Assembly: GCA_001179505.1 (NCBI GenBank)
Contig: CDMY01000597.1
Coordinates: 1-45,391, forward strand
DNA from: Vitrella brassicaformis CCMP3155
Taxonomy: Eukaryota > Protista > Chromerida
Direction of reading: 5' to 3'
DNA length: 45,391 bases
Part shown: positions 28,299 to 31,923 of the stretch, piece after piece
Layout: each line of letters begins with the position of its first letter
Numbering within the stretch: position 1 is the first letter of the stretch
Notes under the pieces: generated by a model
What the model saw: only the letters and a program-made list of their open reading frames with translations
Told to the model about the DNA's origin: nothing
Databases searched by the model: none
Position numbers and translations under genes: made by a program

Positions 28299-28752
28299 GC
28301 TATCAGAAACACCACACCACAGGGGGCACAACAAACCCTAAACCGCCACAAAAGGGGAGGGAGGAATTGGTGCGTCTGAAATGATAGACGGTCAAGTACA
28401 GAGTGTGTGTAAGAGTAGAGAGAGACACAGATAATCTATAGAGGAGACAGACAGACATTGGGGGGCCTGCCGCATTGCATTGCATTTCGCAGAAAGAGAT
28501 AAATAGCATCACACCTGTGGTGTATATGCCTAGACAGTGTGCTCAGATGGACATCATCACATCCATCCATCCATCCAATTTGTGGTACGAGAAAATGTCA
28601 TCGACACGAACAACATCACTGCAGAAACCCCACACAGACAGCCACATACCCACAAACAAGAGCCGAAAGGAAGAAATCAGCTCCCTTTGGCCACATCCCC
28701 TCTCCCTCTCCCTCTCCCTCCCCAACCCACTCAATGCAATGCATCCCTATAC

Positions 28753-29214
28753 TCAGTAGCAGAACTTAGGCCCCGACACCGTCTCAGGCTTGGACCTCTT
28801 CTCAGCGCCCTCAATACGCACCAGACACAGCCCCGACTTCTCGTAGAAGGTGAAAAACCCGCACTTGTCATGCTTCTCGCATCTCGCCCGACACGCCTCC
28901 ACAAAGGCCATGTCCACCAGGTCGTCGGTGTCGGTCTGCTTGGGGATGTCCTCCAGGATCTGTCCCGAAATGCTGCGCCGGAGCTCTTGGAACTGGATGG
29001 CGGATGTGTTTGTGTTGTCATCGTCATCGTCATCGTCGCTGCTGCTGCTGCTGCTGGTGGTGTAGGACATGACGGAGGCCTCTAATAGGTCGCCTGCGCT
29101 CTTTGGGGCGCCGACGTCGAACTCGAAACACCCACATGGCAGATGTGCAGCCGACATGTCAACTAAAGGAACCAACACACATGCACACACACACACACAC
29201 AAGGCCTGTCTATA

Positions 29215-29248
<34 letters not shown>

Positions 29249-30369
29249 GTCACCCACACGCACCTTTGAGTATCTTGGAGGGGTGCATGGCGTCGCCATG
29301 TTTGTCGATGGGCACCGCTCTCAGGTAGACAGTGTCCTCCGTGTCAAGCCCTGCCTCCGCCTTGGCCAGCATTTCCTCCAGCTCCACAATATCCTCAAAA
29401 GCCTTCCTGTCAAGCTGATAGACCACCACCCCCTCTTTCCTCCCCTCATCGTCATCGTCATCGGGATCACCGGCACTGACGTCCGCCAGGTCCTCTGCCG
29501 ACTTTGCCGCGTGTATCTGCCAGTGCTTGATGCCCGTCACGCCGTTGTACGACACGTGCAGGGTCTTCTTGCCGCCGCCGGCGGCGTCGGTGCAAGCGAG
29601 GAGTCGGGGTGGCTGGACGGACTTGCCTCTCCACTTGTCAAGCTTGCCGCGGTAGGCCCGCAGGTGGTGCCCATGCATCTGCCGGACCAGCTTGCCCTGT
29701 GTGTCGACCTCCATCATGATTGGGAGGGGCTCGGGGTCGCTCACCTTGCCGCCACCGGCTGCACACGTCAGAAAGAGGGTGTGTGATTTGTGGTTTGTGG
29801 TTTGTGGTTTGTGGTTTGTTTGCGGTTTACCGATGACGGTGTGTCCGTTGTCGAGGCGCTGTGGGCCGCCGCAGCAGTCGGCGAAGAGGGTCTTCTTGTG
29901 GTCGTACTCCCACACTTTGGTGGCCGTCATGCTGGTCAAGTCCAGCTCGTACTCCACCGCTCGGGAGTAGTTGCGGCCGCCCGGCGCGTCAAGGTCCCAG
30001 TTATCCCACCTGCACACAAACAACCGTCCATTTTGTCTCTCTCGTGTCATATATTCGCCTCACGCAATAATATATCGCTCACATGAGGACATTTCCATTG
30101 CTGAGCTGGTGCGCCTTGTGCTGCAGCCGGAATGGCACCTCAGCGTCGGTGTCGTTGAGGAACTTAAAGTCGCCGTCTTTGCCGCCGAGGCGCCAGAGGA
30201 CCTGGCCGGTCTTGCGGCTGAGGAGCAGCAGCTGGTTGGCCGTCTTGAGGGAGACCAGGATGTTGCCGTCGGGCGAGTACTCGCAGTTGTTGACCGAGTA
30301 CTTGTTGATACCGGTGTCCACGGCGGGGTCAGACACCTCGTGGCTGAAGGCATCCCACGTTCGCCACTG

Positions 30370-30400
<31 letters not shown>

Positions 30401-31923
30401 GGGGAGAGAGGGAGGGGTGTGTGTTGTGTGTGTTCTTGCAGGCCCCATTGGCCACTTGCCTCGAAGATGACGTTGTCGTGTTTGTCGAGCTCCTGGACGA
30501 CCGCTCCGACTGTCTTGCCGTCGTTGAGGCCCCGGTCGTAGATGCAGGTCAGGTAACGGCCGTCCTCAAACACTGTCATGTGGTGATCATCCTATATACC
30601 CACCACAGACAGACATGGCAGACATGACAGAGAGCCCACACACACAAACACACACATACATCCATGTCTTCCTTGGCGTCTGTCTGTCCTCACCTGGAAG
30701 TAGCCATGCCCCGCCCTGCGCGTGGCGACTTCCCTGTAATGGTCGTCGAGCTCCACCCCCTCCCTTGTGGGGTCCATGTGGCCGGGCCACTGCTCATGGC
30801 CCCTCAGGTAGTTGAGGTTGCCATTGGGCTGCACCCGCAGGTCCACCCCCTCCTCACCGTCCTTAAGGCGGTGCCACCACACCAGGTCGCCCTGCCGCGT
30901 CATGATCTGGATGTAAGGCTTGACGAACTGAGTGTTGCAGAACCAGTAGAGAGGCTCGCCGTCGGTGTCGGCCTCTTCGGCGTCGGCGGCCTTGGCCTCC
31001 TTGGAGAGGGTCACGTGCCAGCGGGGGAACTCTCCAGGCAAAGTGCGGTACTTTCTGTTGGGGGTGTCGCCTTGTTTCTCCTCAGAATCGTTGTATTGGG
31101 TGGATGCCGCGCCCTTGAGCTGATGATGCTGATGGTCTGCGTCTGTGCCTGTGTCTGTGTGTCGGGCAAGTTGTCTTCTGGCCTTGGGGGTGCCGCTTCC
31201 CTTGGTGTCCTTGTTGATGGGGATCAGCGCGCCGCTGGCCGTGACCTGGCCAAGCGGCGTGCTGCCTTTGTTGGTTATGGTGAAGGACCACTTGAAGCCG
31301 TCTTGGTAGCCCTTCTCCTCATATCGCGCCAACACGTCGGCCGTGGTATTTTCCACCATGACGCGCAGGCCCGATTTCACCTGCACCTTGACCTTCTCGC
31401 CAGGAATGAAGTGCTTGTGAGGCCTGAAAATGACGGTCTTGCCGTCGGCCGCCAGCCGCAACTCGCCTCGTTTGGTCACATCGCCGCTCTTGCTGCCGGT
31501 GACCCTGAAGACGCCCTGGGAGCCGGCGGCATCAGCAGCGGCCGATGTGGCCATGGCCTTGAAGCTCTTGACGTCGACATTACTGCCTTCGCGTACGGCG
31601 ATGGTGGTCAAGGGCGAGACGACGATGGCGTCCTTGCGGGGGTGAATGTACTCGAAGGGGCCGTAGGGGTGAGTGGTCTTCTCGACGGCCCACACGCCAT
31701 GCTCTATCTTGAAGTCGGCGGGGCCGATCCTGGTGGTCTTCTCGGTGGTGGGCTTCTTGCCGCCGCCCTTGTCGTCGCCAGTGCTGCTGACATCATTGTT
31801 TTCCTTGTGCGGCGTGCTCTTGTCCGAGACTTTCCTGCCCTTGGTGGTGTTTGCCTCAGCTGGTGCCGAGGCGACGCCAGCCAATAGGAGGCAGCCGAGC
31901 GATGCAAGCAGCGGGACTCGCAT
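28753..31923 (-). CDS. Secreted arylsulfotransferase (ASST)-like beta-propeller protein with an N-terminal Ig-like domain and a C-terminal PAN/Apple domain
   Basis: Signal peptide MRVPLLASLGCLLLAGVASA. Ig-like segment IHPRKDAIVVSPLTTI..GKTVIFRPHKHFIPGEKVKV..WSFTI. ASST motifs KYRTLPGEFP, DLRVQPNGNL, DDHHM, DGNILVS..KTGQVLWRLGGKDGDF, FRLQH, SRAVEY, QRLDNGHTVIG, AYR, LHVSYNGVT. Apple segment CFE..ACRARCEKHDKCGFFTFYEKSGLCLVR..SGPKFC*. Exons 31923-30694, 30591-30460, 30366-30083, then from 30009 with two further introns to 28753. Confidence 0.85.
30367..30459 (-). other. GC-AG intron in the ASST-like gene
   Basis: GAG|GCAAGT...(TG)n tcag|TGG gives VIFE-WRTWD, matching the family pattern V.FEW. 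The intron is 93 nt, in frame and stop-free. Confidence 0.75.

What the first reader, a model, noticed from the sequence alone, without database searches (positions are those of the whole stretch)
28753..31923. Secreted bacterial-type arylsulfotransferase fused to an apicomplexan-style Apple adhesion domain
Seen: one open spliced frame encoding signal peptide, Ig-like domain, ASST-like beta-propeller, then a six-Cys PAN/Apple domain with a Ser/Asp-rich insert after its first Cys. Known: ASSTs are PAPS-independent sulfotransferases mainly of bacteria and fungi; Apple domains are the glycan-binding modules of apicomplexan microneme adhesins (TgMIC4, EtMIC5). I know of no described ASST-Apple fusion. 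Inference: a surface or secreted system that binds a glycan and transfers or recognises sulfate, for example on sulfated host, coral or algal polysaccharides or the organism's own wall. It may illustrate how pre-parasitic adhesion modules were combined with acquired enzymes.
Basis: partly seen in the sequence, partly recalled or inferred. Interest (0 to 1): 0.85.

Follow-up and report, generated by a model that had tools for sequence, protein, structure and literature searches.

The report
Secreted algal sulfotransferase-like protein with Apple domain
A real, transcribed gene of the coral-associated alga Vitrella brassicaformis encodes a secreted bacterial-type aryl-sulfotransferase fused to one PAN/Apple binding module; the fusion is genuine and nearly unique, but this copy has lost two conserved active-site residues and the gene family was already noted in 2015.

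Summary
Window 31923-28753 (minus strand) is a six-exon gene. Its 909-aa product is identical to the public protein CEM25338.1 / A0A0G4G8Z9 of Vitrella brassicaformis. Domain order: signal peptide, Big_5-like beta-sandwich, ASST six-bladed propeller, C-terminal beta-sandwich, one PAN/Apple module on its own exon.

Pfam scores exceed curated cut-offs for ASST and PAN_1. The predicted fold matches Streptomyces Cpz4 and E. coli ASST. A contig from a run labelled 'RNA?' removes intron 5 exactly, joining the Apple exon to the enzyme.

The fusion is rare: only three of about 175 ASST relatives checked carry PAN, and they form one clade. The other two are a Vitrella paralogue and an MMETSP transcript of unknown organism.

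New here: this copy alone has Ser for the second catalytic His (E. coli His356; His in 88/90 relatives) and Lys for Arg374. The sulfo-carrier His is kept. I therefore expect a tethered, altered or weak enzyme, or a sulfo-ligand binder.

Woo et al. 2015 already reported a Vitrella-specific expansion of secreted ASST proteins, and UniProt already names the Apple domain. This scan noted the same architecture on another piece of this genome (s1-227006). Nothing marks the Apple domain as specifically apicomplexan. Function is untested.

The parts
28753..31923 (-). Whole coding span of the six-exon gene. Product is 909 aa = CEM25338.1 / UniProt A0A0G4G8Z9, Vitrella brassicaformis CCMP3155.
   Evidence: Model built. 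It is identical to database protein P0001.
31852..31923 (-). Predicted signal peptide, residues 1-24 (one basic residue, a hydrophobic core, then A-x-A). No C-terminal membrane anchor anywhere in the protein.
   Evidence: Read from the sequence. Helix 3-17 in the model. No signal-peptide predictor was available, so cleavage after A24 is inference.
31264..31722 (-). N-terminal Big_5-like (Ig-like) beta-sandwich, residues about 68-220.
   Evidence: pLDDT about 90 and all-beta. Big_5 is sub-threshold at 14-16 bits. Residues 85-190 match dozens of bacterial Big_5+ASST proteins at 35-60% identity.
30694..31923 (-). Exon 1 (residues 1-410): signal peptide, linker, Big_5-like domain, disordered linker 222-288, first propeller blades.
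30592..30693 (-). Intron 1 (GT-AG, 102 nt).
   Evidence: A spliced joint 30590/30693 skipping 102 bases is seen in run X7. An unspliced contig is also present there.
30460..30591 (-). Exon 2 (residues 411-454). Holds His413 (codon 30585-30583), the equivalent of E. coli ASST His252.
30367..30459 (-). Intron 2 (GC-AG, 93 nt, with a TG microsatellite).
   Evidence: Only this junction restores the conserved motif FEWR(S/T)WD with no indel. Paralogue P0002 has a GT-AG intron at the same position and phase. No read covers the junction. One X7 contig runs 23 bases into the intron.
30083..30366 (-). Exon 3 (residues 455-549). Holds Ser478 (30297-30295, in place of E. coli His356), Asn480, Lys495 (30246-30244, in place of Arg374) and His537 (30120-30118, equivalent to the sulfo-carrier His436).
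   Evidence: Arylsulfotran_2 34.7 bits on this exon alone. Column counts in 90 relatives. Residue mapping through the profile alignment to 3ELQ.
30010..30082 (-). Intron 3 (GT-AG, 73 nt). Absent from paralogue P0002.
   Evidence: The junction restores an ungapped alignment to homologues. No read evidence.
29831..30009 (-). Exon 4 (residues 549-609), propeller blades.
   Evidence: Arylsulfotrans 34.6 bits on this exon alone.
29759..29830 (-). Intron 4 (GT-AG, 72 nt, phase 1).
   Evidence: Same position and phase as in P0002. No read evidence.
29264..29758 (-). Exon 5 (residues 609-774): last blade plus the C-terminal beta-sandwich shared with bacterial ASSTs, with an acidic insert near 705-718.
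   Evidence: Aligns to residues 100-432 of Cpz4 (9KF6) through position 704. pLDDT above 90. Transcript contigs cover 29264-29415 and 29554-29736.
29163..29263 (-). Intron 5 (GT-AG, 101 nt, phase 1), which separates the enzyme from the Apple exon.
   Evidence: X1 contig record 2 (589 nt) passes from 29162 directly to 29264, record positions 437 to 438. Same position and phase in P0002, V774 versus L613.
28753..29162 (-). Exon 6 (residues 774-909 plus stop): PAN/Apple module. First Cys pair C782/C784 (from 29139), core C864-C908 (to 28759).
   Evidence: PAN_1 at 32 bits on the exon and 27.9 bits on the full protein, cut-off 21.4. Cys spacing C-x3-C-x5-C-x11-C-x21-C. Weak PDB hits to TgMIC4 and EtMIC5 apple domains. 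All named Atlas neighbours, by features and by structure, are PAN. My own AF2 models of this part are unreliable.
29005..29061 (-). Ser/Asp-rich low-complexity run (residues 808-826). It lies inside an insert of about 45 residues between the first and second Apple cysteines.
   Evidence: Absent from P0002 and P0283 in the pairwise alignments.

Best explanation
This is a genuine, expressed nuclear gene of the chromerid alga Vitrella brassicaformis.

Its product is secreted, with a signal peptide and no membrane anchor. It consists of a complete bacterial-type PAPS-independent aryl-sulfotransferase cassette: a Big_5-like sandwich, a six-bladed propeller and a C-terminal sandwich, as in Streptomyces Cpz4. 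One PAN/Apple module, encoded by its own phase-1 exon, has been added at the C-terminus.

The gene belongs to a Vitrella-lineage expansion of at least seven genomic paralogues. These form one clade among otherwise bacterial and fungal sequences. PAN was added once, in the ancestor of a three-member subclade.

Inferred mechanism. ASST chemistry needs no nucleotide cofactor, so it can run outside the cell. An aryl sulfate donates its sulfuryl group to His537, which passes it to an acceptor hydroxyl. The PAN module holds the enzyme on an extracellular glycan or protein, such as the cell or sporangium wall, mucilage or a partner's surface.

In this particular copy the second catalytic histidine is Ser478. 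That histidine is the proposed acid/base partner (E. coli His356, D. hafniense His283). The sulfate-clamping Arg374 equivalent is Lys495. All other near-invariant residues are kept.

I therefore expect this copy still to bind, and perhaps accept, a sulfuryl group, but to be a slow or chemically altered transferase or a sulfo-ligand-binding paralogue. The sister gene P0002, which keeps all five residues, would be the canonical tethered enzyme.

Shown: the gene model, one splice junction to the Apple exon, the domain identities, the ASST fold, the residue substitutions and the single origin of the fusion. Inferred: secretion, tethering, substrates and the catalytic consequence of the substitutions.
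For: Gene model and transcript:
- The gene model equals the public protein.
- A transcript contig splices exon 5 to the Apple exon, and intron 1 is also seen spliced.
- Every junction restores an ungapped alignment to bacterial homologues.
- Three of five introns are shared in position and phase with paralogue P0002, including the one before the PAN exon.

Domain identities:
- ASST and PAN_1 score above Pfam cut-offs.
- The AF2 model has pLDDT above 90 over the sandwich, propeller and C-terminal sandwich.
- Foldseek top hits are Cpz4 (9KF6/9KF4, TM by target 0.83/0.80), then E. coli ASST 3ELQ/3ETS/3ETT/4P04-07.

Active site:
- The profile alignment to 3ELQ maps His252, His356, Asn358, Arg374 and His436 to H413, S478, N480, K495 and H537.
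- Among 90 relatives, position 478 is His in 88 and position 495 is Arg in 85.
- Each of the four other Vitrella paralogues in that alignment keeps all five residues.
- The roles of the residues come from PMC13426309 and the two 2026 bioRxiv papers.

Evolution:
- The Vitrella and MMETSP rows form an exclusive nine-row clade. The three PAN-bearing proteins form a clade at SH-aLRT 100.
- P0001 and P0002 had similar end branches in the first tree (0.51 and 0.52). In the second tree they were 0.49 and 0.74. P0001 is never the longer, so this copy does not look like a decaying pseudogene.
Against: - No biochemical data exist for any eukaryotic member.
- Introns 2-4 have no read support, and the runs are only guessed to be RNA.
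- The PAN fold could not be modelled with confidence (pLDDT below 50).
- The role of the His356 equivalent as acid/base rests on simulations in preprints. I did not retrieve mutagenesis data for it.
- Ser plus the neighbouring His414 (shared with P0002) or a water molecule might substitute, so the enzyme could be fully active.
- Secretion to the outside, rather than to an internal compartment, is not shown.
- Expression is low.
Confidence: 0.6

Rival explanations
1. It is a fully active secreted aryl-sulfotransferase, and its Apple domain targets it to a sulfated or sulfatable glycan of host, coral, alga or its own wall.
For: The sulfo-carrier His537, His413, Asn480 and about 15 other near-invariant residues are kept. 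Lys495 keeps the positive charge of Arg. The fold is intact. Its branch is no longer than that of the sister copy. Reviewed ASSTs accept sugars and alcohols as poor acceptors (PMC13426309).
Against: Ser replaces the histidine that is His in 88 of 90 relatives and that current models make the proton shuttle in both half-reactions. Known ASST donors are aryl sulfates, not sulfated polysaccharides. No glycan specificity is known for this PAN.
Confidence: 0.25
2. It is a non-catalytic pseudo-enzyme. The propeller pocket serves only as a binding site for a sulfated or phenolic ligand, and together with PAN it makes a two-site extracellular adhesin or lectin.
For: Two active-site substitutions are unique among the Vitrella paralogues examined. 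The Arg position also varies in the PAN subclade: Arg in P0002, Lys in P0001, His in P0283. The protein is fused to a module best known for binding.
Against: The nucleophilic His and the rest of the pocket are strictly kept, which a pure binder would not need. There is no evidence of binding.
Confidence: 0.12
3. It is a gene-model artefact. The Apple exon belongs to a separate transcript, or the ASST part is bacterial contamination of the assembly.
For: Reads do not cover introns 2-4. Expression is low. The closest non-Vitrella relatives are bacterial.
Against: A contig splices 29264 to 29162 exactly. The same collinear architecture occurs in paralogue P0002 and in an independent transcript, P0283. 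The gene has five spliceosomal introns, host-like GC and eukaryotic neighbours on the same contig. The intron before PAN is conserved.
Confidence: 0.03

Closest known systems
Cpz4, the Streptomyces ASST-type sulfotransferase of caprazamycin biosynthesis (PDB 9KF4/9KF6)
   Same: Best sequence match (phmmer E 3e-21 over residues 379-704; profile E 1e-122) and best structure match (TM by target 0.83). It has the same propeller plus C-terminal sandwich and the same His/His-x-Asn/Arg/His constellation in the family.
   Different: Cpz4 is a 472-aa bacterial enzyme with no N-terminal Big_5-like domain in the crystallised chain and no PAN. It keeps the second His and the Arg. It acts on liponucleosides.
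E. coli CFT073 periplasmic aryl-sulfate sulfotransferase ASST (PDB 3ELQ, 3ETS, 3ETT)
   Same: An N-terminal beta-sandwich plus a six-bladed propeller. It works outside the cytoplasm. Ping-pong transfer runs through a sulfo-histidine (His436, equivalent to His537 here). His252 and Asn358 equivalents are kept.
   Different: Only 13-15% identity. His356 is Ser and Arg374 is Lys in the Vitrella protein. The Vitrella protein has long extra linkers, a C-terminal sandwich and PAN.
Vitrella paralogue P0002 (CEL93334.1, 706 aa)
   Same: Same collinear architecture including PAN. About 52% identity over the ASST region. Shared intron positions.
   Different: It keeps all five active-site residues and lacks the Ser/Asp-rich insert. 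It sits head-to-head with another ASST gene, P0020.
Vitrella secreted 'Arylsulftrans' family of Woo et al. 2015 (six genes, including Vbra_18635.t1 with TREFOIL and BIG_5)
   Same: The same lineage-specific expansion of secreted ASST proteins. One other member is also fused to a glycan-binding module.
   Different: The paper lists no gene under both Arylsulftrans and PAN-APPLE and does not discuss active sites. I could not map the Vbra identifiers to this protein.
Apicomplexan microneme Apple domains (TgMIC4, PDB 2LL3/4A5V; EtMIC5, 1HKY)
   Same: The only PDB sequence hits for the C-terminal module. The helix-plus-hairpin cysteine pattern is shared.
   Different: The hits are weak (E 0.014-0.48). 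There is a single module rather than a tandem array, and no enzyme partner in the MIC proteins. Galactose-binding residues were not examined.

Membership tests
PAPS-independent aryl-sulfate sulfotransferase (ASST; Pfam PF05935/PF14269) | Profile match above the curated threshold | tested here: met
   PF05935 at 86.2 bits against 24.2; PF14269 at 50.6 bits against 27. Exons 3 and 4 also pass on their own.
PAPS-independent aryl-sulfate sulfotransferase (ASST; Pfam PF05935/PF14269) | Six-bladed beta-propeller catalytic domain with an N-terminal beta-sandwich | tested here: met
   AF2 pLDDT above 90 over these parts. Foldseek top hits are Cpz4 (TM by target 0.83) and E. coli ASST.
PAPS-independent aryl-sulfate sulfotransferase (ASST; Pfam PF05935/PF14269) | Sulfo-carrier histidine (E. 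coli His436) | tested here: met
   His537; invariant in 90 of 90 relatives.
PAPS-independent aryl-sulfate sulfotransferase (ASST; Pfam PF05935/PF14269) | First conserved histidine (E. coli His252) and Asn358 | tested here: met
   His413 (89/90) and Asn480 (89/90).
PAPS-independent aryl-sulfate sulfotransferase (ASST; Pfam PF05935/PF14269) | Second catalytic histidine (E. coli His356 / D. hafniense His283 / Salmonella His317), the proposed proton shuttle | tested here: not met
   Ser478 (codon TCG, 30297-30295). His in 88 of 90 relatives and in all other Vitrella paralogues aligned.
PAPS-independent aryl-sulfate sulfotransferase (ASST; Pfam PF05935/PF14269) | Sulfate-coordinating arginine (E. 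coli Arg374 / D. hafniense Arg301) | tested here: not met
   Lys495; Arg in 85 of 90 relatives. The change is conservative in charge.
PAPS-independent aryl-sulfate sulfotransferase (ASST; Pfam PF05935/PF14269) | Aryl-sulfate to phenol sulfuryl transfer activity | not testable with these tools
   Needs a recombinant enzyme assay.
PAN/Apple domain (Pfam PF00024, clan PAN) | Profile match above the curated threshold | tested here: met
   PAN_1 at 27.9 bits (full protein) and 32 bits (exon 6) against 21.4. Met independently in P0002 (27.1 bits) and P0283 (24.8 bits).
PAN/Apple domain (Pfam PF00024, clan PAN) | Six-cysteine pattern (C1...C2-x3-C3-x5-C4...C5...C6) | tested here: met
   C782 or C784, C864, C868, C874, C886, C908. 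The same cysteines are invariant in P0002. Which of C782/C784 pairs with C908 is unknown.
PAN/Apple domain (Pfam PF00024, clan PAN) | Apple fold (helix packed on an antiparallel sheet) | tested here: inconclusive
   My AF2 models have pLDDT below 50 here, and the fold search was meaningless. The ESM Atlas model of the protein aligns 70-77 residues to PAN clusters, with TM up to 0.67 by target and 0.47 by query.
Apicomplexan microneme Apple adhesins (MIC4/MIC5 type) | Tandem Apple arrays and specific relatedness to apicomplexan Apple domains | tested here: not met
   Single PAN module. Only weak PDB hits (E 0.014 or worse). Atlas neighbours come from rotifers, bacteria and chordates.

The most novel reading that the evidence does not exclude
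Vitrella, and at least one other MMETSP-sampled protist, run an extracellular, cofactor-free sulfation or sulfate-sensing system. It is built from a bacterial ASST cassette that eukaryotic exon shuffling has re-targeted with glycan-binding modules: PAN/Apple in three proteins and trefoil in another. Within it, this copy has evolved into a non-canonical member. It would be either a sulfo-ligand receptor or an enzyme with a one-histidine mechanism, acting on the alga's wall or on coral-holobiont mucus.
Probability: 0.15. Interest if true: 0.65.

Novelty: new variant of a known kind. Interest (0 to 1): 0.42.

Why it matters
ASSTs are known almost only as bacterial periplasmic or biosynthetic enzymes. 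Their natural substrates remain largely unknown, and eukaryotic members are unstudied.

A secreted, intron-bearing, expanded family in a photosynthetic relative of Apicomplexa has some members fused to adhesion-type modules. This gives a concrete case of a bacterial enzyme cassette being domesticated and re-targeted by exon shuffling.

The natural pair P0002 (canonical site) and P0001 (His-to-Ser, Arg-to-Lys) is a ready-made test of the proposed two-histidine mechanism. It does not by itself explain the origin of apicomplexan adhesins.

Tried and rejected
1. PAN structure. The full-length AF2 run left residues 783-909 at pLDDT below 50. A second run on 776-909 with only the paralogue as alignment gave pLDDT 42.6. 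Its PDB fold search returned only noise. I give it no weight.

2. Word-index homologue searches. The search on the PAN region found only the query. The searches with P0001 and P0002 missed each other and the other Vitrella paralogues. They are therefore not exhaustive, and 'no other ASST-PAN' is a sample statement.

3. Organism of the third ASST-PAN protein, P0283. The exact look-up found only a 1.2-kb JGI transcript contig for its cluster mate and nothing for P0283 itself. A metagenome scan was blank, and the findings index was blank. GC3 of 0.61 against 0.82 hints at another organism but proves nothing.

4. Bacterial donor lineage. Two trees place the Vitrella clade differently among bacteria, with weak support. 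No donor is named, and transfer direction is inferred from taxon distribution only.

5. A paper search for His356 mutagenesis returned unrelated papers. I did not retrieve the 2008 E. coli ASST paper.

6. Rejected: bacterial contamination (introns, eukaryotic neighbours).

7. Rejected: plastid targeting. There is no aromatic residue after the signal peptide and the following region is acidic. This is inference only.
Full report
**What is there**

The window is a complete 45,391-bp contig of Vitrella brassicaformis CCMP3155. On the minus strand, from the ATG at 31923 to the TGA ending at 28753, I assembled six exons:
- 31923-30694
- 30591-30460
- 30366-30083
- 30009-29831
- 29758-29264
- 29162-28753

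Four introns are GT-AG and one is GC-AG (30459-30367). The result is an open 909-codon frame.

An exhaustive HMMER search with exon 1 returned a 909-aa protein (P0001) that is identical over its whole length to my model. It is CEM25338.1 / UniProt A0A0G4G8Z9, named 'Apple domain-containing protein'. The gene model was already public.

**Is it one transcript?**

In run X1, guessed to be RNA, a 589-nt contig covers 28733-29162 and then continues without any intervening letters at 29264-29415. This removes exactly the predicted intron 5, so the Apple exon is spliced to exon 5. Exon 5 encodes the last propeller blade and the C-terminal sandwich of the enzyme.

Run X7 shows a joint 30590/30693 that skips 102 bases (intron 1). 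It also holds unspliced contigs. Introns 2-4 are not covered and depth is low.

Indirect support for the uncovered junctions:
- Each junction restores conserved motifs without indels in an alignment with bacterial homologues.
- Introns 2, 4 and 5 lie at the same codon and phase as in paralogue P0002. There intron 2 is GT-AG.

**Domains**

Pfam on the full protein:

| Family | Bits | Cut-off | Residues |
|---|---|---|---|
| Arylsulfotrans | 86.2 | 24.2 | 319-634 |
| Arylsulfotran_2 | 50.6 | 27 | 410-611 |
| PAN_1 | 27.9 | 21.4 | 855-894 |
| Big_5 | 14.4 | 23.6 (not met) | 128-215 |

AlphaFold2 with a 90-sequence alignment gave pLDDT above 90 for three parts: an N-terminal beta-sandwich (about 68-220), the propeller (about 290-650) and a C-terminal beta-sandwich (about 655-775). 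The linkers at 20-66 and 222-288 and the whole of 783-909 were unreliable.

Foldseek against the PDB put Streptomyces Cpz4 first (9KF6/9KF4, TM by target 0.83/0.80). All E. coli ASST entries followed. By sequence, Cpz4 is also the best solved relative (E 3e-21; profile E 1e-122).

The PAN assignment rests on four points:
- The Pfam hit, repeated independently in two relatives.
- The canonical cysteine spacing, conserved with P0002.
- Weak PDB hits to TgMIC4 and EtMIC5 apple domains.
- ESM Atlas neighbours: every named one, by features and by structure, is a PAN cluster.

My own PAN models failed.

Relative to P0002, about 45 extra residues lie between the first and second cysteines, including the Ser/Asp run 808-826.

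**The active site**

A profile of 14 family members aligned to E. coli ASST (3ELQ) lets the published residues be mapped:

| E. coli ASST | This protein | State in 90 relatives |
|---|---|---|
| His252 | His413 | His in 89 |
| His356 | Ser478 | His in 88 |
| Asn358 | Asn480 | Asn in 89 |
| Arg374 | Lys495 | Arg in 85 |
| His436 | His537 | His in 90 |

Each of the four other Vitrella paralogues in the alignment (P0002, P0003, P0020, P0026) keeps all five residues. The block around Ser478 and Lys495 is otherwise almost identical to P0002, so the alignment is not in doubt.

His436 is the crystallographically shown sulfo-carrier. His252, His356, Asn358, Arg374 and Thr501 coordinate the sulfuryl group (PMC13426309). 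Two 2026 preprints propose the His356 equivalent (D. hafniense His283, Salmonella His317) as the proton donor and acceptor of a two-histidine mechanism. They list Tyr194, His220, His283, Asn285, Arg301 and His350 as conserved.

About 15 other near-invariant positions are intact in P0001. Its end branch is never longer than that of P0002 (0.51 against 0.52; 0.49 against 0.74). This looks like a targeted remodelling of the pocket, not decay.

**Family and origin**

Vitrella encodes at least seven full-length ASST proteins: P0001, P0002, P0003, P0020, P0026, P0011 and P0012, plus fragments. P0002 and P0020 are head-to-head neighbours.

Woo et al. [quoted passage not shown] They list six 'Arylsulftrans' genes. 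All are Vitrella genes, and one also has TREFOIL and BIG_5. None appears under PAN-APPLE.

In about 165 ASST relatives with precomputed Pfam domains, only P0001 and P0002 carry PF00024. Among nine further proteins that I scanned, one MMETSP transcript (P0283, 761 aa) has the same collinear architecture.

In a 92-row tree the Vitrella and MMETSP rows form an exclusive nine-row clade. The three PAN-bearing proteins form a clade with SH-aLRT 100, with P0283 outside P0001+P0002. PAN was therefore added once, and the shared phase-1 intron before it fits exon shuffling.

All other relatives are bacterial or metagenomic, apart from two fungal proteins that nest elsewhere. The position of the Vitrella clade among bacteria changes between trees. 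Acquisition from bacteria is the economical reading, but the donor is unresolved.

P0283 has no cluster mate at 90% identity in the Vitrella genome. Its cluster mate's coding sequence has GC3 of 0.61, against 0.82 here. Its organism remains unknown.

**How it probably works**

Shown: a secretory-type N-terminus, no anchor, an intact ASST fold with the sulfo-carrier histidine, and a C-terminal PAN module in the same transcript.

Inferred: ASST chemistry needs only an aryl-sulfate donor, so it suits a compartment without PAPS. The E. coli enzyme is periplasmic. A C-terminal PAN module, and trefoil modules in another paralogue, would hold the enzyme on an extracellular glycan or protein.

For this copy, loss of the proton-shuttle histidine and the Arg-to-Lys change lead me to expect slow or altered transfer, or mere binding of a sulfated or phenolic ligand. 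P0002 would be the canonical enzyme. I put about 0.6 on this overall picture, 0.25 on a fully active enzyme and 0.12 on a pure binder.

**Comparison and verdict**

It works like, and is structurally a member of, the ASST family. It fails two of the residue criteria, so I file it as a divergent member.

It carries a bona fide PAN/Apple module by sequence criteria. Nothing marks that module as specifically apicomplexan, and it is not a MIC-type adhesin.

The fusion is not described in any paper I could find. It is visible in public annotation, and the enzyme family's expansion was reported in 2015. Earlier notes of this scan on other pieces of the same genome describe the same architecture (s1-227006) and an ASST-trefoil fusion (s1-233300).

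It is a new variant of a known kind, of moderate interest.

Noticed in passing
L001:4982-10439: Paralogues P0020 (ASST without PAN, minus strand) and P0002 (ASST with PAN, plus strand) are head-to-head neighbours. Their gene models start only 71 bp apart, which suggests a shared bidirectional promoter or a local inverted duplication.
   Followed up: partly
P0283 / L002:114-1208: A third ASST-PAN protein exists only as an MMETSP transcript. A 90%-identical fragment sits on JGI sample 3300017148. GC3 is 0.61 against 0.82 for the window gene. It has His at the Arg374-equivalent position. The organism is not identified.
   Followed up: partly
window:30367-30459: Intron 2 uses a GC donor (GAG|GCAAGT) and carries a long TG microsatellite. 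The homologous intron of P0002 uses GT. Other introns of the gene also carry CA/TG or GA repeats (for example 29170-29259).
   Followed up: partly
window:31953-32300 and 28302-28700: RNA-contig depth is 10-100 times higher just outside both ends of the gene than inside it. A 2.7-kb contig ends at about 31953, only 30 bases upstream of the start codon. This is presumably the 3' end of the neighbouring minus-strand gene, so the intergenic spacer is very short. Several 20-base matches near 28302-28322 and 28555-28577 look like short repeated motifs shared with abundant transcripts.
   Followed up: no
window:44001-45000: GC drops to 0.41 in the last kilobase of the contig, against 0.52-0.61 elsewhere.
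   Followed up: no
window:30582-30585 (His414) and P0002: The residue after the first catalytic histidine is His in P0001 and P0002. In 78 of 90 relatives it is Glu or Asp. This is a second histidine near the pocket, peculiar to these two PAN-bearing paralogues (P0283 has Ser there).
   Followed up: no
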